Source: Podarcis vaucheri
Lineage: Eukaryota
Assembly: GCA_965113315.1 (NCBI GenBank)
Contig: OZ220374.1
Reading direction: 5' to 3' (one strand)
Length of the DNA: 64,000 nt
The position numbers and the translations under genes are program-made. The notes beneath the pieces were generated by a model. The model was not told the DNA's origin. It was given only the letters and a program-made list of their open reading frames with translations, and did no database searches. Positions 1,014 to 59,167 of this stretch are shown here, piece after piece (within the stretch, counting starts at the first letter, position 1; every line of letters begins with the position of its first letter).

Positions 1014-1191
1014 GGGTGTTAAGGGAGGGGTAGTATCTCTGGTGGAGGACACACCATGCTCCTTCTGGGTACTTTATCCACCTTTGGTCGCCACCCTGCA
1101 CTCAGCTCTCACCTGTGGCTCCTAGAAGCTGTCAGCATGTGACAGCAGCAACACACCAGGAACAGCTCAAGTGGCGGGCTAAACCAGGTGA
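1014..1191 (+). ncRNA. Candidate HDV-like self-cleaving ribozyme (degraded copy) at the element 5' end
   Basis: Element order P1-J1/2-P2-P3-L3(UCC)-P3'-P1'-GG-P4-GCUAA-P2' is discernible. P2 is tcacctg (1109-1115) with caggtga (1185-1191). Confidence 0.6.
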
Positions 1192-1208
1192 TGGGTCTCA
1201 AACCATCT

Positions 1209-1461
1209 GAGCCAGTGTGGTGTAGTGGTTAAGAGCAGTAGACTCGTAATCTGGTGAACCGGGTTTGTGTCTCCGCTCCTCCACATGCAGCTGCTGGGCT
1301 AGTCCTTGGGCCAGTCACACTTCTTTGAAGTCTCTCAGCCCCACTCACCTCACAGAGTGTTTGTTGTGGGGGAGGAAGGGAAAGGAGAATGTTAGCCACT
1401 TTGAGACTCCTTCGGGTAGTGATAAAGCGGGATATCAAATCCAAACTCTTCTTGTCTTCTT
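1209..1461 (+). mobile_element. tRNA-derived SINE (Squam2-like)
   Basis: Head gagccagtgtggtgtagtggttaagagc with A box, degenerate B box, body ccttgggccagtcac, and (TCT)n tail. Confidence 0.8.
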
Positions 1462-1505
<44 letters not shown>

Positions 1506-1780
1506 TTATTTATACCCCACCCATCTGGCTGGGTTTCTTCCCACAGAATATTAATAATAATAAAAAAGCAATAAAACATCAAGCATTAAAAACTTTCCTA
1601 AACAGGACTGCCTTCAGATGTCATCTAAAAGTCTGGTAGTTGTTGTTCTCTTTGACATCTGGTGGGAGGGCATTCCACAGGGCGGGCGCCACTACCGAGA
1701 AGGCCCTCTGCCTGGTTCCCTGTAGCTTCACTTCTCGCAGTGAAGGAACCACCAGAAGGCCCTCGGAGCTGGACCTCAGT
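1462..1780 (-). mobile_element. 5'-truncated L2 LINE 3' end with (TTA)n tail
   Basis: Reverse strand encodes RAFSVVAPALWNALP, typical of the L2 ORF2 C-terminus. (AAT)n run at about 1463-1505. Confidence 0.85.
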
Positions 1781-2177
1781 GACTTCCCCTGCATGTGAAG
1801 ACAGGCTCCAGTGGATTGAACAGATGAGACCCATAGTCTAACAGTCAAGAAGGTGCTTTCTGCACGTGCTGTAGAGGGAACTGAGGGGCAGAGGGGACTC
1901 ATCCACCTGGAAAGGTAGCCCATCTAGGAGAAGGGAAACTCTGATCCTAAACCTCTGCTGCCTTGTGGGGTACATTCGGGAGAAGAATAGGCTAAGGAGT
2001 AAAACCTGCACAAATCCAGACTGGAGTCCCCAAGACTGTTGGATGGCATTTTGTATGCCTCCTTCTGGCAACTTCTGCAGCCAAGTTGGTGCCAAGTATA
2101 TTGCTCTGCTTTCCATTAGACCACATCAGCAAGACCGAGAGGGGGGTCTTGTTGTCTGAGCAGCCCAGGACCTCCAT

Positions 2178-2499
2178 GAAGGAGCGTCTCCACCCCCATC
2201 GTTCTACCCGGACACTGAGGTCCAGCACCGAGGGCCTTCTGGCGGTTCCCTCACTGTGAGAAGCCAAGTTACAGGGAACCAGGCAGAGGGCCTTCTCGGT
2301 AGTGGCGCCCGCCCTGTGGAACGCCCTCCCACCAGATGTCAAAGAGAACAACAACTACCAGGCTTTTAGAAGACATCTGAAGGCAGCCCTGTTTCGGGAA
2401 GCTTTTAATGTTTGATGTATTATAGTATTTTAATATTCTTTTGGAAGCCGCCCAGAGTGGCTGGGGAAGCCCAGCCAGATGTGTGGGGTATAAATAATA

Positions 2500-2540
<41 letters not shown>
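2178..2540 (+). mobile_element. 5'-truncated L2 LINE 3' end with (TTA)n tail
   Basis: Same family as 1462-1780 but opposite orientation. Confidence 0.85.
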
Positions 2541-2542
<2 letters not shown>

Positions 2543-2855
2543 CACATTGCCCAGGCTTGTGCCCTGGGGAAGTCACTTTTGTGCTGCTAACGCAGCAGTT
2601 TGACTTTGCGCCTGGAGACGCACTCCATTGTGTCTCGAAACAGACAGGTGCCAACAACAGCAAGAAAACTGCCAAAGAGGAAGGTTCAATCACATAGCAG
2701 GGGCGGCCTGTGCTCATCCTGCTTCCTTACACCATTATGATTTTCAGCGCCAGAGAGGGGGCACGTTATAGGGTCAGGCTTCAGCAAGCTCTTCAACGCA
2801 ACGTTCCTCTGGCCACCCTCAGCTGATCTTCATGGGGGAAGGCGCAAGTCCAATC

Positions 2856-7500: not shown

Positions 7501-8115
7501 TTCCCTTTCCCAGGCGCAATGTTTTTCCCACCTGAGGGCAAAGCCTCATAAGGCTACACCATGTTTAAAGCATTCCGACAACACTTTAAACACTTCCTCA
7601 TACCCTGCAGCTGTCCCAGTGGGACATCGTGCCAGATCATGGTGGCCATTTTGGGCACTGTGATTTCGGCCCCAATAAAAGCACATCTTTTGGGTTCTTG
7701 TGCAGGTCACGTGACTTGTGCCAGAAGCAGAGCCAAGAAGACGGGACATCCCGGTTTGGGGACTCAGCGCGTTGGAGGGTATACTTCCTGCAAAGCATTA
7801 TGGGAGTTGCAGTTTGCTATGGGTGCCAAGAGTTCTTAGGAGACCTGTTCTCCTCTCAGAGCTATAACTCCAAGAGTTCTCTGTGAAAAGTGGGTTGTCA
7901 AACCACTCTCTGGAAACATGCAATTCACAGAAATCTTTGGGGAAAGCCACGACTGTTTAAAGTGGCATCATAGTGCTTTAAATGTATGGCATGAATGTGT
8001 CCTACGCTGAATTCTACCCAGTGTTCTTTCTGCTGTTGTGAGACACCAATCTTCAGTGCGGCGGCAGCTATTTTCTCTGGAATTCTCTGCCTATTAATAT
8101 TTGTCAGGAGTGTAT

Positions 8116-8723
8116 GGGGTGTTAGGGAATGGGTAATATCTCTGATGGGAGATATCTTGGTGCTCCTCCTGGGGCAGTTTGTCCACCTTTGGTCCCCACC
8201 CTGCACTCAGCTCTCACCTGTGGTTCCCAGAAGCTATCTAGCTTTTGACAGTGGCCACATCCCAGGAAACGGATCTGATTGGGCAGCCGATGGGTCTCAA
8301 ACCCTCAGTGAGTTATGGACTTCCCCTGCATGTGAAGCCAGGCTCTGGCGGATGTAGCAGTGGGTCCAATGATCAAGAAGGCAGTTTCTGTATGTGCTGC
8401 AGAGGGAAGGAAGTGAGGGCCAGATGGGGCCCATCAATCTGGGAATGTTGCCCATCAGAAAACTCTGACACTAAACTTCCACCGCCTTGCAGCTGCACTC
8501 GTCCTTTCTAAAGGCTTTGGGAGTAAGCCCTGAGGAAAAATTCGTACCCACTGCCTTGTAGGACACCTTCAGGAGAAGAAAAGGTTAAGACGCACGCTCT
8601 ACACACATCTGGAACAGTGTCCCTAAGACGGTTGGGTGATGCCTTGTGATTCTTCCACAATTTGACTTCATCCCCATAGGCCCACTCCATTGTATCTCAA
8701 GACAGACAGATGGCAACAACAAC
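8116..8723 (+). mobile_element. Non-autonomous RTE-derived element, copy 2 (internal deletions)
   Basis: Aligns with copy 1 from its first base (ggggtgttaggga). Ends cactccattgtatctcaagacagacagatggcaacaacaac. Confidence 0.75.
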
Positions 8724-9392
8724 ATTAGTCAGAAACCTTCACTGTACAGTTATTGATGCCTGCTTAAAAAAACAAAACACTTTTTGCTTAGGTAAACCAT
8801 GTAATTTTATTATGTACATTTTAAACATGTCTGATTTTATCTATGTTTTAATAAGCTGATTGTGTCTACAATTTTAATGTCTGTTTTTATCCCTTTTTTA
8901 AAACAACCACACAATAGCTTGTATTATTTTATGTAAACCCCTTCATGAAAGACGTTAAAGTATCTCATTGTTCAGTATGTTGTTTGGTTTTCTGGGCAAT
9001 TTTTCTCCTATAATCCATGGCTTATATTAGGTTTGGGGAGGGGTTACATTATATTACTGTATTCTATGCCTTTTAACATTCCGTAAACTTTGAAGTTTTA
9101 GTAAGCTGCCTTGAGGTTTAGGAAAGGGTACAGCATTATTTTAAAAGTAAAAGTTACAGCATGTTTTCTTGGTTGTTTTCAAGGTAAGCGTTGATTGAGG
9201 CATGTTCTCATGCAAAGCATCTGTCTTGACAGAGCAAAAATTACGAATGAATGAAAGCAAGTGCATTGTTCTGATGATGCCTTAAAGGCACATAAATCCT
9301 AACCCTATTCACATTTTAGCCTCATAGACAAATAATCTGTAAATGTAGTCTTATACTTAAACACTCACGCTTTTTTCCTTGTATGTCTTGCC

Positions 9393-11160: not shown

Positions 11161-11208
<48 letters not shown>

Positions 11209-11307
11209 TTATTTATACCCCGCCCATCTGGCTGAGTTTCCCCAGCCACTCTGGGCAGCTCCCAATCAACTGTTAAAAACAATACAGCATTAAATATTAA
11301 AAACTTA
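11161..11307 (-). mobile_element. L2 3' end with (AAT)n microsatellite, inserted in an older SINE
   Basis: ttatttataccccgcccatctggctgagtttccccagccactctggg, the same terminus as 1462-1780. Confidence 0.8.
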
Positions 11308-24796: not shown

Positions 24797-24935
24797 NNNN
24801 NNNNNNNNNNNNNNNNNNNNNNNNNNNNNNNNNNNNNNNNNNNNNNNNNNNNNNNNNNNNNNNNNNNNNNNNNNNNNNNNNNNNNNNNNNNNNNNNNNNN
24901 NNNNNNNNNNNNNNNNNNNNNNNNNNNNNNNNNNN
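24797..24935. other. Assembly gap (139 N)
   Basis: Run of N. Confidence 1.
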
Positions 24936-34356: not shown

Positions 34357-35743
34357 TAGACTCTTCGTTTCATCTAAAGGAATGCATTTAAGAGCGTATA
34401 GATCCAAGATTTTACCATTCCTCGGCAATACTGAATACAGTTTACTCTACAAAGATCTGCTAAGCACCAAAACAAAAACAGACAGCCTGACTCCTTGATT
34501 AACCATGCAGAGATAAGAAGGGCCAGGAAGGTACTCTGAATGGGGAAATACCACCTGGCCAACAAGCCGCTAAACTATCTTGGTGTGCCTTTTTCAAAAG
34601 TTCAGGGTTCATGTTTGAGGCATATACACTAGAAAATTCTGCATCTAAAGTAGTGCCTGACTTGTTGAAAAGCTGTGACCAGAAATGTCAGACAAGTTAG
34701 TCTGCTCTTTGCTTGTTGACTTATTTGTGGCTTAGACAAATTGTCGTCAAAGCTGATTTGCAGCAGCTGTTTACATTGACTGAATATAAAATTTAAGGCC
34801 TATGCTTAGAGCTGCAAAATCACAGGGCTGCAAGGAGCCGCAAATCATCTAGTTCATCCCTCTACTTTAGGTACACACTGCAGTTTAATCTCCTACTAAT
34901 TAACACACTACTGCCACATTATAGCTTGCCACTGGCGACAGAGCAGCTGCACACAAGTTATACCATGCCAAGTGCCTACAGACACAAAATAGTTTAGGAA
35001 AAGCAATCTAGATGTCATTGCTCTATAGGGTGAAAGTGGTGAAAAACCCCCGACTAGGTAACTTGGTAATATGACCATATGTAGGAAAGAACCTCTTAAT
35101 TAAAACTGAACCAAATTCCACAAAACTCTTCATTGGGCAGAAACTGGCCCAATAATCATAACCACATTACACGTTTCATTTCTTATGTCTAGTTAATTGA
35201 AGGCTTTGGTTGCACATCTGATGATAATCCATGATATATTAAGCTTCTGTGGCTAGTATAGCAGGTGGAAAATAGCTATAGGAGAAAGCTACATAAGCAG
35301 AATGGCCATCTTGGTCCATGTTTTGTGACAAAGATCTCATTTAAAATTTTTAACTGATATACATTTTGTATGAATAAAGCAACAATCTGGCCACTTCTGC
35401 TTCACATATCTGTTATTAAAGGCAACTAAGCTGTCTGATCACAACAGAAAAGCAACCCCTTTGTAAACAGTTAAACTGCTAGAAATATATTCTACACCCC
35501 CTTGGGAGTCTGTTTTCAGATTGCACACTGACCCTTTGGGAGAAGAGGAACATGGAAGTTCAAAGAAGAAACGGGGCGACACAGAATACAGAGGAATCTC
35601 ACATTCATAATAAACAATGGGGGTTACTCTTCCTTGCCCGGAAGTTTGAATTTCTAAGTGCCACATTAACAGTGGCAGCCTAGAACCCACAATCAGCCTC
35701 TGAAACAAAAGGACAAAAATGAAACTTCTACACAAAGAGGTAC

Positions 35744-35981
35744 CTGTCAGAGAGTGCACCAGTTCAGATGTCTCCACATCATACAGGTTTGCTGTTCTAT
35801 CCCATGAAGCTGTCACAGCTTGCTTCCCTCCAACTAGCCAATCAGCTGCTATGACTACACCTTGGTGGCTTTTTAGGAAAGTTAAAGGAGCCCGGATGGT
35901 GGGACAATCACTAGAACCATCTCCATCTCCTTCAGGTTCATCTTTATCAGAGAACTCAACTTCATCTTCTCCAGACATTTG
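35744..35981 (-). CDS. WDR37: WDR37 coding exon 9 ([15 protein letters not shown]...ELVHSLT, 238 nt)
   Basis: Overlaps ORF 35439..35978; acidic loop plus WD40 repeat. Acceptor AACAG, donor GTACCT. Confidence 0.96.
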
Positions 35982-56897: not shown

Positions 56898-56915
56898 ACT
56901 ACGCAGGAAATAGTA

Positions 56916-57388
56916 CCTGCATGCAAAGACAGGCTCTAGTAAATTGAGTGGACAAGACCAATAGTGGGTCTGATGGTCAAGAAGGCAGCTTCTGGGAAGT
57001 GAGAGGTTGGTAGAGCTCATCAGCCAAGGAAGGTAGCCCATCTAGGAGAAGCAAAACTCTGCTCCCAAACTCGTGCTGCCTTGGGAGATATCCTTGGTAG
57101 AAGAAAATGCTAAGGAGCAAATCCTTGCCAAATCTGGAGTGCAGTTCCTAAAGCAGTTGGGTGGCATCTTGTATGCCTCCTTCCCACAACTTCTGCAGCC
57201 AAGCTGGTGCCGAACGTATTGCTCGACTTTCCATCAGCAAGGGCCAGGGGGTCTTGCCATCTGGGAAGTCCAAGACCTCCATACTCACTGCCCAGGCTTC
57301 TTCCCCAGGAAGGTCAATTTGGTGCTGCTAATGCAGCAGTTTGACTTCACCCCTGGAGATGTACTCCATAGTCTCTCGAGACAGATGA
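56916..57388 (+). mobile_element. Non-autonomous RTE-derived element, copy 3 (5'-truncated; in the WDR37 intron upstream of the first coding exon, antisense)
   Basis: Colinear with 1788-2177 plus 2541-2650, without the L2 insertion. Ends actccatagtctctcgagacagatg. Confidence 0.75.
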
Positions 57389-59167
57389 GTGAGAACCAGA
57401 GAAGGGCCATAGCAGAGCACAGAGACATACGCAATGTGGATGCACCCAGCCCCACCTCAATTGATTATAGACCTGTGAGGATAAATACACAAGTACAGAT
57501 GTAGTTGTAATCCAAAGTATGCACATTCACTTGCAGGTAAGCATAGCGTGAACTGGATACATGGGATCTCTCTGCACCCCACTAGCTAGGCCATACTGAT
57601 CAAAATACAGTGTCAAAAGAACATAATCAGATGATTCAAGACAATAGGTAAATGTTAACTATAATATTACATTGTAGACAGGAATCTGCAGGAATCTATA
57701 CAAACATCCCTGTGCGCATAAGTGAAAATCACAAAAGGGGGAACACCCTCTAAACACCCATTTTTTCCTGCTCTCTAGCTCTCTTCAATCCAGACCGAAA
57801 TATCTACAGTGAAGCTCTGGGGCTGGCTGGAAGGTGTGCACTTCAGCTGTTAGGTGTGGAGGCTGAGCAACCTAAACAAAGCCTTGCTGTGCCTCTGGTC
57901 TTTTGGGGGCTTTCTGTGCCCCCAATGACATCCTCTTCTGGCTCCAGGGAGAGTCTCCTTGCAAGCCCTGAGGACTTTCCCCCATTTCCTGGTACGTACG
58001 TATGTATTTCCCAGTGCCATGCAGTCGCACACAAGTCAACTGTGCATTAAGTGGGATGACGCCTGTACTCAAGTTCTGTTGGGAGTACTCTCACATTCAT
58101 AGGCCAAAAGCTGCAATTGTAGCCTTTCCATGGCAACATATGAAACTATCAGGTCACCTAACATAGGTCTGGTTTCTGTAAACCACTGTTGATGAACTTG
58201 ATTGTGTTTTTTAATGTCCCCTTCATGTGTTGCAACTGTTTTGCATGAGGAAGTCAGATCAAGGTTTGACTACACATTTCAACTATATTCATTTGAACCA
58301 GTGTTGCACAAATGATATTTTTAAAGCTATTTGCTAATATAATGGGGCAGCAACTGATGACTCAAACTCAAAACGGCATTATGGCAAAGGTAACATTACA
58401 CTTGAGTATATAAGAACTAGTTTGCTAAGTTGCAAACAATGCTCCCTTAAATGCCCCAAGCATAAAATTTTGCAACAGTGATAAATCAGGTCCACAGCAG
58501 AAAAATGACTTGCCTTAAGTTATTCACATCCTAACAAATTATCCAATAAAAGGTGGGAGAGATATAAACTATTCTACAATGGCAAAGAGACAACTATACA
58601 ATTTTTTAATACTATTATTCTAGTATCCGAATTATCCTTTACAGAGCATGTTTTATACCTTTAAATAAAACACACAACATCTACTTTTTATTGAATGTAT
58701 CAGATTATTTCTGATTATTTATTTCTGGAAGATAAAATGTAAAACAAATTATCATTTAATTGTCAAAGATGAAACAAGAATAGCAAGCATAAAAGATCAG
58801 GCAACAATGTTACAAGGTCCCCCCAATAAGTCACCTACTTTAGCAATAGTTGGTATTCCTAATATGCTTACTTGTCTGATCTTAAGCAATCAAGACGAGT
58901 TGTGTAATGAAAGAAAAAAATCCCTCGGGCATTCATGTTTCTGAAAGCCAAGAGACAATATCTCTTTCAGGAAATATCAGAATGTGGAAAGAATTACTAA
59001 AGCAGTGTGCTTCCTTTTTTGTCCATTTAAAATGACTTAGGTTTGAGGGAGGGAGACTGGCAGAGCAAGTATAAATGCAAAAGCAAGCTCCCCACCCCTT
59101 TCTGCTCTTTCTTCTTTTTAACAAACACACACACAGAGAAGTTAACAGTTAAGATTTTCAGAGGGCT

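What the first reader, a model, noticed from the sequence alone, without database searches (positions are those of the whole stretch)
1014..1191. Candidate HDV-like self-cleaving ribozyme at the 5' end of a lizard RTE-derived element
Seen in sequence: copies 1 and 2 together give the full HDV topology in the correct order. P1 5' GGGGUGU (8116-8122; copy 1 GGGUGU 1014-1019) pairs with ACAUCCC (8257-8263), 7 bp with one G-U. A ~90-nt J1/2 follows, itself a hairpin (AGGG/CCCU, GGUGGA/UCCACC). P2 is UCACCUG (1109-1115) with CAGGUGA (1185-1191). P3 is GGC/GGU with GCC (8254-8256). L3 opens with UCC (1120-1122), which could form P1.1 with the GG just after P1'. A short, degraded P4 (1163-1177) is followed by J4/2 GCUAA, with the putative catalytic C at 1179. 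Established: HDV-like ribozymes process the 5' ends of R2, RTE and L1Tc/ingi retrotransposon RNAs. Inference: this family carries such a ribozyme. Both copies here are mutated (several changes look like CpG decay) and are probably inactive.
Basis: partly seen in the sequence, partly recalled or inferred. Interest (0 to 1): 0.85.

Follow-up and report, generated by a model that had tools for sequence, protein, structure and literature searches.

The report
Decayed HDV-like ribozyme in lizard retroposon
Two worn-out copies of a roughly 614-bp, high-copy lizard retroposon carry the remains of a hepatitis-delta-type self-cleaving RNA fold; the family's majority sequence, recovered from sequencing reads, restores every helix of that fold, but with an unusual hairpin inside the catalytic loop L3, and cleavage itself has not been tested.

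Summary
Neither copy alone passes an HDV descriptor, and Rfam finds nothing.

The main new result comes from WGS reads and contigs of four runs.
- The family has roughly 250-2300 copies by depth.
- Its majority sequence has P1 GGGGUGU/ACACCCC, P2 UCACCUG/CAGGUGA, P3 GGC/GCC, P1.1 CC/GG, P4 CGGC/GCCG, L3 starting UCCUAG, and J4/2 CUAA. That is 23 of 23 Watson-Crick core pairs.
- A relaxed descriptor hits 4 of 40,000 dinucleotide shuffles, and none is as good as the observed match. It hits nothing in the 128 kb of natural window sequence.

Four points count against it.
- L3 is 28 nt and contains a 6-bp hairpin.
- The cleavage-site pair is G-C, not G.U.
- Family homology starts about 6 nt upstream of G1.
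- There is no covariation, RNA or cleavage data.

RTE origin is untested; Vingi is equally possible.

My estimates: about 0.85 that the fold is not chance, and about 0.55 that master copies self-cleaved. Both window copies are dead. First-stage notes flag HDV-like candidates on two other pieces of this genome; whether they are this family is not known.

The parts
1014..1191 (+). Copy 1, HDV-like region (decayed). P1 5' strand 1014-1019; J1/2 1020-1108; P2 5' strand 1109-1115; P3 5' strand 1117-1119; L3 1120-1147 with hairpin 1128-1146; P3' 1148-1150 (GCA, was GCC); P1' 1151-1157 (ACACACC, was ACACCCC); P1.1 partners 1158-1159 (AG, was GG); P4 1163-1177; J4/2 1178-1184 with the putative catalytic C at 1179; P2' 1185-1191.
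   Evidence: Sequence, alignment, pair-by-pair table (18 of 23 core pairs intact).
1192..1210 (+). Copy 1: element sequence immediately 3' of the ribozyme-like region, up to the SINE insertion point.
1211..1780 (.). Two SINE insertions that interrupt copy 1. One is tRNA-derived, about 1211-1500 on the + strand. The second is about 1501-1780 on the - strand.
   Evidence: Weak tRNA-like Rfam match at 1219-1283. BLAST matches to other SINE copies at 11165-11306. Sequence.
1781..2120 (+). Copy 1, middle part of the element.
   Evidence: BLAST and nhmmer matches to 8318-8638.
2121..2540 (+). Third SINE insertion in copy 1.
2541..2663 (+). Copy 1, 3' part, ending in a CAA-type tail.
   Evidence: matches 8656-8725.
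8099..8109 (+). Probable target-site duplication of copy 2, left copy (ATTTGTCAGGA).
   Evidence: Matches 8724-8734 at 9 of 11 positions. My estimate of chance is about 0.03.
8110..8723 (+). Copy 2, an uninterrupted 614-bp ORF-less element. It begins with a 6-nt leader (GTGTAT, 8110-8115) ahead of the proposed cleavage site.
   Evidence: Other family members' alignments start at 8105-8114, mostly at 8110, and the depth in bin 8090-8114 fits a start near 8110.
8116..8290 (+). Copy 2, HDV-like region (decayed). P1 5' strand 8116-8122; P2 5' strand 8214-8220; P3 5' strand 8222-8224 (GGT); L3 8225-8253; P3' 8254-8256; P1' 8257-8263 (ACATCCC); AGG 8264-8266; the P4/J4/2 region is partly deleted; P2' remnant CAGCCGA at 8284-8290.
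8724..8734 (+). Probable target-site duplication of copy 2, right copy (ATTAGTCAGAA).
56914..57404 (+). Copy 3 of the family. It lacks the first roughly 200 nt, so it has no ribozyme-like region.
   Evidence: nhmmer, sequence.

Best explanation
The region is the 5' end of an old, high-copy, ORF-less non-autonomous non-LTR retroposon of about 614 bp. The element has a defined 5' end, a CAA-type tail and an 11-bp target-site duplication. Its founder sequence encoded an HDV-like nested double-pseudoknot ribozyme.

In the family majority sequence the order is as follows:
- P1 GGGGUGU, with a U at position -1.
- A 91-nt J1/2 that folds into its own long hairpin abutting P1.
- P2 UCACCUG, then one nucleotide, then P3 GGC.
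- L3 = UCCUAGAA + 6-bp hairpin (GCUGUC-AGCAUGC-GACAGC) + G.
- P3' GCC, then P1' ACACCCC.
- GG, pairing with the CC of L3 to form P1.1.
- GAA, then P4 CGGC-UUUGACUG-GCCG.
- J4/2 G-CUAA-AC, carrying the putative general-acid C.
- P2' CAGGUGA.

Inferred mechanism, as in R2, RTE and L1Tc elements: the ribozyme cuts immediately 5' of G1. This frees the element RNA from read-through or host co-transcripts and leaves a structured 5' end.

Shown here: the fold is present, complete and statistically unlikely by chance in the majority sequence, and the two window copies are mutated beyond function.

Inferred, not shown: catalysis, the role in 5' processing, and tolerance of the L3 hairpin. On tolerance, the hairpin lies at the 3' end of L3, after the position I equate with G25, which I recall from the HDV crystal structures as solvent-exposed; no tool checked this.
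For: Family majority sequence.
- In one search the loose-end consensus strings were identical in all four runs. They give GCC-ACACCCC-GGG and CGGCTTTGACTGGCCGGCTAAACCAGGTGA.
- The majority calls 8224 T>C and 8228 C>T restore GGC and UCCU.
- there is one unique descriptor solution, with 23 of 23 core pairs Watson-Crick and 6 of 6 pairs in the L3 hairpin.
- U at L3 position 1, G at L3 position 6, the J4/2 C and the two As are all present.

Statistics.
- 4 of 40,000 shuffles hit the relaxed descriptor, and 0 of 40,000 match as well as observed.
- 0 hits in 128 kb of natural sequence.
- no alternative register exists.
- the reversed and reverse-complement sequences give no hit.

Structure prediction.
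- P2 has a predicted pairing probability of 0.69-0.99. When P1 is enforced, J1/2 folds as a self-contained hairpin.

Context from the literature.
- ORF-less bipartite non-autonomous LINEs are reported only for RTE, Ingi, Vingi and R2, and RTE, Ingi and R2 carry 5' ribozymes (PMC5786205).
- J1/2 of 216-498 nt and a dispensable P4 occur in active R2 ribozymes, and the active Nasonia R2 ribozyme has non-standard L3 spacing (PMC3774820).
- A structured J1/2 activates the Agam-2 ribozymes, which I recall to be RTE-associated, about 1000-fold (PMC4908430).
- U at -1 is the fastest leader nucleotide in HDV (PMC1874588). Both copies have T at -1.
Against: - A 28-nt L3 with a hairpin is not reported for any HDV-like ribozyme I know of, or in the papers I read.
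- The cleavage-site pair is G1-C, whereas the G1.U37 wobble is described as required or essential (PMC1874588, PMC8495972). From memory, Cerrone-Szakal et al. 2008 found G-C tolerated, but that paper is not held.
- J4/2 has two extra nucleotides, unless P2 is drawn with a bulged C.
- Family homology begins about 6 nt upstream of G1 and lies inside the TSD of copy 2. A leader should not be inherited if cleaved RNA were the usual template.
- Rfam finds no HDV-like family even at E<=10.
- Nested-fold thermodynamics are no better than shuffles (z = -0.6). The 5' G-run prefers a partner inside J1/2, so the predicted P1 probability is 0.
- There are no compensatory changes (only two copies), no RNA ends and no cleavage assay.
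- I wrote the descriptor after seeing the candidate.
Confidence: 0.55

Rival explanations
1. Relic ribozyme. The fold descends from a real HDV-like ribozyme of the parent LINE, but the founder of this non-autonomous family was already catalytically dead or very slow. The cause would be the hairpin insertion in L3 and/or the G-C at the cleavage site. The element then spread as uncleaved RNA from its own or a host promoter.
For: This explains why a conserved 6-nt leader upstream of G1 is inherited by most copies (TSD). The L3 length and G1-C deviations fall at positions called essential in HDV (PMC1874588, PMC8495972). The helices would still be perfect in the consensus if amplification quickly followed inactivation.
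Against: All 23 core pairs, the conserved U/G/C/A positions and the hairpin itself are flawless in the majority sequence. That is more easily explained by selection in the master lineage. Copy 1 starts at G1 (within 1 nt), as a cleaved template would. Active natural ribozymes tolerate large deviations (PMC3774820).
Confidence: 0.22
2. Chance resemblance. The element's G-run/C-run-rich 5' region contains many possible helices, and the HDV-like arrangement is a coincidence, or a structured 5' UTR with some other role such as promoter or RT recognition.
For: Several results give no independent support for a ribozyme.
- No Rfam hit.
- MFE z-scores are near zero: -0.6 for the whole region, -0.24 for J1/2 and -1.75 for the 3' domain.
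- An alternative partner for the 5' G-run lies inside J1/2 at -10.1 kcal/mol, against -11.8 for P1.
- I designed the descriptor post hoc.
- No covariation is available.
Against: 4 of 40,000 shuffles match the relaxed descriptor and none matches as well as observed. There are 0 hits in 128 kb of natural sequence. It improved P1, P1.1, P3 and P4 and confirmed P2. All conserved core nucleotides except U37 are present. The motif sits where known retroposon ribozymes sit.
Confidence: 0.18
3. The repeat is not a retroposon 5' end at all (a solo LTR, a MITE or a local segmental duplication), so a 5'-processing ribozyme would make no sense.
For: Only three copies lie in the window, and no partner LINE was identified. 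About 350 reads per run continue past 8718 into a different conserved sequence.
Against: The evidence fits an interspersed retroposon and none of the three alternatives.
- Depth of hundreds to thousands at about 1x coverage shows an interspersed high-copy family.
- There are no terminal inverted repeats.
- A TG...CA reading gives no matching 4-6-bp TSD.
- The element has an 11-bp TSD and a microsatellite-like CAA tail.
- Copy 3 lacks the first roughly 200 nt, which fits 5' truncation during reverse transcription.
Confidence: 0.05

Closest known systems
drz-Agam-2 family of HDV-like ribozymes of Anopheles gambiae (RTE association per Ruminski et al. 2011, not held; Webb et al. 2016, PMC4908430)
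   Same: Both sit at the 5' end of a non-LTR element. Both have the nested double pseudoknot. Both have a large structured J1/2 (P1.2) domain that abuts P1 and brings P1 and P2 together.
   Different: The host is a lizard. L3 carries a 6-bp hairpin (28 nt in total). The cleavage-site pair is G-C. Activity is untested. A 6-nt conserved leader precedes G1.
R2 retrotransposon ribozymes (Eickbush & Eickbush 2010; Eickbush et al. 2013, PMC3774820)
   Same: It is the same fold with the same proposed role of releasing element RNA from a co-transcript. Very long J1/2 loops (216-498 nt), a variable or absent P4, and an unusual L3 spacing in an active example (Nasonia) show that the family tolerates comparable deviations.
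   Different: R2 is rDNA-specific and autonomous, and cleavage is at or upstream of the 5' junction. Here the element is dispersed and ORF-less, and the putative site is 6 nt inside the element.
L1TcRz/Pr77 of the L1Tc/ingi clade and its non-autonomous NARTc/RIME/SIDER derivatives (PMC3185411, PMC3383444, PMC4035085)
   Same: An HDV-like ribozyme sits in the first nucleotides of an element that spawns ORF-less bipartite derivatives. The dual promoter-plus-ribozyme arrangement of Pr77 offers a way to reconcile a short inherited leader with cleavage.
   Different: L1TcRz is about 77 nt and compact, and it cleaves at +1 of the element. There is no sequence similarity. Whether the lizard element belongs to the related Vingi clade is unknown.
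Mammalian CPEB3 ribozyme and HDV genomic/antigenomic ribozymes
   Same: They share the core architecture and conserved positions: the L3 pattern U-C-C-U-x-G compares with HDV UCCUCG, J4/2 is C-N-A-A, P1 is 7 bp starting with G, and P3 is 3 bp.
   Different: Those ribozymes are 68-85 nt with a 7-8-nt L3 and a G.U cleavage-site pair. They are single-copy intronic or viral, not retroposon-borne. Rfam models of these families do not score the lizard copies.

Membership tests
HDV-like self-cleaving ribozymes | Nested double pseudoknot with P1, P2, P3, P1.1 and P4 in the canonical 5'-to-3' order | tested here: met
   Met in the family majority sequence with 23 of 23 Watson-Crick pairs and one unique solution. 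Not met by either actual window copy.
HDV-like self-cleaving ribozymes | Catalytic C in J4/2 followed by N-A-A just before the 3' strand of P2 | tested here: met
   GCUAAAC in the majority sequence and in copy 1 (C at 1179). Deleted in copy 2. There are two extra nt before P2', unless P2 is drawn with a bulged C.
HDV-like self-cleaving ribozymes | L3 with U at position 1, CC (the P1.1 strand) at positions 2-3 and G at position 6 (the U20/G25 equivalents) | tested here: met
   UCCUAG in the majority sequence, UCCUAG in copy 1 and UCCCAG in copy 2, so positions 1, 2, 3 and 6 are kept in all three.
HDV-like self-cleaving ribozymes | Short L3 (7-8 nt) | tested here: not met
   L3 is 28 nt with an internal 6-bp hairpin. 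I found no precedent. The only non-standard L3 spacing in the papers I read is the Nasonia R2 ribozyme (PMC3774820).
HDV-like self-cleaving ribozymes | G1.U37 wobble pair at the cleavage site | tested here: not met
   G1 pairs with C (ACACCCC followed by GGG) in the majority sequence and in both copies. The wobble is called required or essential in PMC1874588 and PMC8495972. Tolerance of G-C is from my own recollection only.
HDV-like self-cleaving ribozymes | Site-specific Mg2+-dependent self-cleavage 5' of G1, abolished by mutating the J4/2 C | not testable with these tools
   No RNA runs were obtained (one search listed DNA runs only). No wet-lab assay.
HDV-like self-cleaving ribozymes | Covariation supporting the helices | tested here: inconclusive
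   Only two copies carry the region. All differences from the majority are disruptive, as expected for neutral decay, and none is compensatory.
HDV-like self-cleaving ribozymes | Recognition by curated Rfam covariance models (HDV, CPEB3, drz-Agam and others) | tested here: not met
   No hit at gathering score or at E<=10 on either copy. This is expected given the decay plus the long J1/2 and L3, so the weight is low.
Ribozyme-terminated non-LTR retroposons (R2, RTE, L1Tc type) | Cleavage site coincides with, or lies upstream of, the element's 5' boundary | tested here: inconclusive
   Copy 1 begins at G1 (within 1 nt). Copy 2 and most family members begin about 6 nt upstream: contig starts are at 8105-8114, the bin depth fits a start near 8110, and the TSD lies at 8099-8109.
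RTE-clade non-autonomous element | 5' and 3' ends homologous to an autonomous RTE LINE | not testable with these tools
   No LINE ORF in the window and no repeat library available. Vingi is an equally possible parent (PMC5786205).

The most novel reading that the evidence does not exclude
A vertebrate retroposon family with thousands of copies used an HDV-like ribozyme of a new architecture. It would have an extra helix inserted at the 3' side of L3 and a Watson-Crick G-C at the cleavage site, and it would be pinched by a 91-nt J1/2 hairpin. It might work together with an internal promoter that starts 6 nt upstream, in a Pr77-like dual system. That would show that the catalytic loop of the HDV fold tolerates a domain insertion, and that current descriptors and covariance models miss a class of such ribozymes in vertebrate genomes.
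Probability: 0.35. Interest if true: 0.72.

Novelty: new variant of a known kind. Interest (0 to 1): 0.55.

Why it matters
HDV-like ribozymes at retroposon 5' ends are established in insects, nematodes, trypanosomes and some chordates. I found no report for squamates, or for Vingi or RTE derivatives of lizards, in the library searched.

If active, this family would do three things:
- It would add a high-copy vertebrate example.
- It would show that L3, the most constrained loop of the fold, can host a helix. That would explain why descriptor and covariance-model searches miss it.
- It would support the proposed link between 5' ribozymes and the birth of ORF-less bipartite LINE derivatives (PMC5786205).

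If inactive, it is a clean example of a ribozyme fossil that is recoverable only from a family consensus.

Tried and rejected
Searches that found nothing:
- Rfam at gathering score on the whole window, and at E<=10 on both copies. There was no HDV-like hit, only noise.
- A protein route to further copies: translating 8115-8354 and searching the protein collection gave no candidate.
- Exact-pattern scans of metagenome contigs (23-mer and 20-mer) and of prokaryotic genome contigs (20-mer) for host contamination gave 0 hits.
- The scan's own findings searched by sequence gave nothing. Searches by place or words returned only unchecked first-reader titles.

Analyses that were uninformative:
- Thermodynamics. 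The MFE of the 182-nt majority RNA, of J1/2 and of the 3' domain are not clearly better than shuffles, so energy gives no support either way.
- Alternative P1 registers, or a cleavage site at the element's true 5' end (8110). There is no solution.

Readings rejected:
- Solo LTR, MITE or segmental duplication. These are rejected on copy number, absence of TIRs, the 11-bp TSD, the CAA tail and a copy lacking its 5' part.
- A search for a partner LINE in the window. There is no ORF of 150 aa or more with LINE character.

Papers not held, so their content is cited from memory or second hand only: Ruminski 2011, Webb 2009, Perrotta & Been 1996, Cerrone-Szakal 2008 and Kojima 2011.

Consensus step. 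A 201-nt majority sequence of the non-coding 5' part was assembled inside scripts, by applying the variant calls to window copies. It is kept in scratch only. No full-length or coding consensus was built. The element is a non-viral, ORF-less retroposon.

Full report
**What is in the window**

The finding covers the first roughly 180 nt of a repeated element present three times in the window.
- Copy 2 (8110-8723) is uninterrupted.
- Copy 1 is the same element split by three SINE insertions: 1014-1210, 1781-2120 and 2541-2663.
- Copy 3 (56914-57404) lacks the first roughly 200 nt.

Copies 1 and 2 are 81% identical over the region of interest. The element has no long ORF and ends in a CAA-type tail. 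In copy 2 it is flanked by an 11-bp direct repeat, ATTTGTCAGGA at 8099-8109 and ATTAGTCAGAA at 8724-8734. This repeat matches at 9 of 11 positions; my estimate of chance is about 0.03. There are no terminal inverted repeats, and no LTR-type short TSD.

It therefore looks like an ORF-less 'bipartite' non-autonomous non-LTR retroposon. Such elements have been reported only for the RTE, Ingi, Vingi and R2 clades (PMC5786205). Vingi is an equally good candidate.

**Check of the observation**

The model is, however, a chimera of two copies.
- Copy 1 keeps 18 of the 23 core pairs.
- Copy 2 has lost P4, the J4/2 cytosine and two P2 pairs.

Neither copy passes an HDV descriptor even when it is loosened. 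Rfam reports no HDV-like family at gathering score or at E<=10.

**Family-level evidence**

I laid WGS reads and contigs of four runs, from at least three species labels, on 8040-8780 at 80% likeness.
- The family is high-copy. Depth at about 1x sampling is about 250 at the 5' end and up to about 2300 in the core at 8165-8239.
- Where copy 2 is too diverged to align, the loose-end consensus strings give the family sequence, and they are identical in all four runs.
- Behind 8235 the string contains GCC-ACACCCC-GGG.
- Before 8281 the string reads CGGCTTTGACTGGCCGGCTAAACCAGGTGA.
- The majority calls 8224 T>C and 8228 C>T turn GGT into GGC and TCCC into TCCT.

Most differences between the two window copies and this majority are CpG decay.

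Applying these calls to the window copies gives a 201-nt majority sequence.
- P1 GGGGUGU/ACACCCC
- P2 UCACCUG/CAGGUGA
- P3 GGC/GCC
- P1.1 CC/GG
- P4 CGGC/GCCG
- the L3 hairpin, 6 of 6 pairs

L3 begins UCCUAG, which compares with HDV UCCUCG and has the U and G at positions 1 and 6. J4/2 is CUAA. Position -1 is U in both copies, the fastest leader nucleotide for HDV (PMC1874588).

**Is this chance?**

I wrote a deliberately relaxed descriptor with these requirements:
- P1 of 7 bp starting with G, at most one G.U
- J1/2 up to 110 nt
- P2 of at least 6 bp
- 0-1 nt between P2 and P3
- P3 of 3 Watson-Crick pairs
- L3 of 7-40 nt
- P1.1 of 2 Watson-Crick pairs from L3 positions 2-3
- P4 of at least 3 bp
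- J4/2 of CNAA plus 0-2 nt

Results:
- It finds exactly one solution in the majority sequence.
- It finds none in the reversed or reverse-complement sequence.
- It finds none in any other register.
- It finds none on either strand of the 64-kb window.
- Among 40,000 dinucleotide shuffles of the majority sequence, 4 hit anywhere, 2 hit with P1 starting in the first 11 nt, and none was as good as observed.

The descriptor was written after seeing the candidate. However, its relaxations (long L3, long J1/2) are included in the null. I put the probability that the fold is a coincidence at roughly 0.15-0.2.

**What does not fit**

(i) L3 is 28 nt, against 7-8 in known members. The insertion is a 6-bp hairpin placed after the position I equate with G25. 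From memory of the HDV crystal structures, which no tool checked, that end of L3 is solvent-exposed and varies in length between the genomic and antigenomic ribozymes. The active Nasonia R2 ribozyme also has non-standard L3 spacing (PMC3774820).

(ii) G1 pairs with C. The G1.U37 wobble is described as required or essential (PMC1874588, PMC8495972). My recollection of Cerrone-Szakal et al. 2008 is that G-C is tolerated and occurs in natural isolates, but the paper is not held.

(iii) J4/2 has two extra nucleotides, unless P2 is drawn as 8 bp with one bulged C.

(iv) Family homology starts about 6 nt upstream of G1.
- Contig alignments begin at 8105-8114, with all four listed contigs of run X15 starting at exactly 8110; three of these continue upstream, so their start is informative.
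- The depth of bin 8090-8114 is what a start near 8110 predicts.
- These 6 nt lie inside copy 2's TSD.

A leader upstream of the cut should not be inherited if cleaved RNA is the usual template. Known retroposon ribozymes cut at or upstream of the 5' junction (PMC3774820). Copy 1, by contrast, starts at G1 (within 1 nt).

(v) Nested-fold thermodynamics are neutral. The whole region has z = -0.6. P2 has a predicted pairing probability of 0.69-0.99, whereas P1 has 0 because the 5' G-run has a competing partner inside J1/2.

(vi) There is no covariation, no RNA-end data and no assay.

**Features that fit known biology**

With P1 enforced, the 91-nt J1/2 folds as one long hairpin abutting P1. This resembles the P1.2 peripheral domain that accelerates the Agam-2 ribozymes by about three orders of magnitude (PMC4908430). 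J1/2 loops of 216-498 nt occur in active silkmoth R2 ribozymes, where P4 is dispensable (PMC3774820). The L1Tc Pr77 region is both an internal promoter and a ribozyme (PMC3383444). A similar dual arrangement, with transcription starting 6 nt upstream, would reconcile the leader with cleavage, but this is speculation.

**Verdict**

- Most likely (0.55), the founder and master copies of this family carried a working HDV-like ribozyme of unusual architecture, and the copies in this window are dead fossils.
- The main rival (0.22) is that the fold is a genuine HDV-like relic already inactivated in the founder by the L3 insertion and/or the G-C pair. This best explains the inherited leader.
- Chance, or another kind of structured 5' UTR, gets about 0.18.
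- A non-retroposon identity gets about 0.05.

I found no paper on HDV-like ribozymes in lizards or Vingi elements. I file it as a new variant of a known kind, of moderate interest, pending a cleavage assay and a genome-wide census of 5' ends.

First-stage notes flag HDV-like candidates at the heads of 'RTE' elements on two other pieces of this genome (s1-851473, s1-854144). Whether they are this family is not known. None of those notes has been followed up, and I give them no evidential weight.

**Limits**

- Only one read-laying run was allowed. Its output lists the best-supported rows only, so the minority variants and the loose ends at 8110 are not visible.
- The majority sequence is a per-position majority, not linked haplotypes.

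Noticed in passing
window 8661-8718 and beyond 8718: About 350 reads per raw-read run leave copy 2 after 8718 and continue with a well-conserved 30-mer (TTAAAAAACTATTTGAAAGAATTTTATTTC, agreement 0.91-0.95) instead of the CAA tail. A related and apparently younger repeat shares the 3' module 8661-8718 but has a different continuation.
   Followed up: no
window 8165-8239 versus 8115-8164: Depth is about 2300x in the core (the 3' half of J1/2 through the start of L3) but only about 250-350x in the first 50 nt. Part of this is due to copy 2's divergence. It may also mean that the core module is shared with other repeat families, such as SINEs whose bodies derive from LINE 5' UTRs, as described in PMC5786205.
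   Followed up: partly
window 8235-8290: Several contigs and reads join about 8191-8236 directly to 8281-8290. These are deletion variants of the family that lack L3, P1', P4 and J4/2. One variant carries a different 40-nt filler that still contains a GCTAA-like motif (tables 5 and 5c).
   Followed up: no
window 8281-8290 versus 1185-1200: The loose-end consensus ending in CAGGTGA abuts 8281 (GGGCAGCCGATGGG), not 8291. The family majority may therefore carry about 10 nt between P2' and TGGGTCTC that copy 1 lacks. This lies outside the ribozyme model.
   Followed up: no
window 1211-1780, 2121-2540, 11165-11306: Copy 1 is interrupted by three SINE insertions. One is tRNA-derived with an (AAT)n tail (weak tRNA match at 1219-1283). 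Two belong to another family, in opposite orientations. A further copy of that family lies at about 11165-11306.
   Followed up: partly
window 35439-35978 (- strand): A 179-aa ORF whose N-terminal part looks to me like a WD-repeat protein fragment. It is probably a host-gene exon read through into an intron. It was not searched.
   Followed up: no
window 24797-24935: A run of 139 N, an assembly gap or masked stretch.
   Followed up: no
window 7900-8900, orthologous locus: Contigs from runs labelled as different organisms (A and E) match the unique flanks of copy 2 with 0-3 differences. The insertion is therefore shared by closely related species and predates their split.
   Followed up: no
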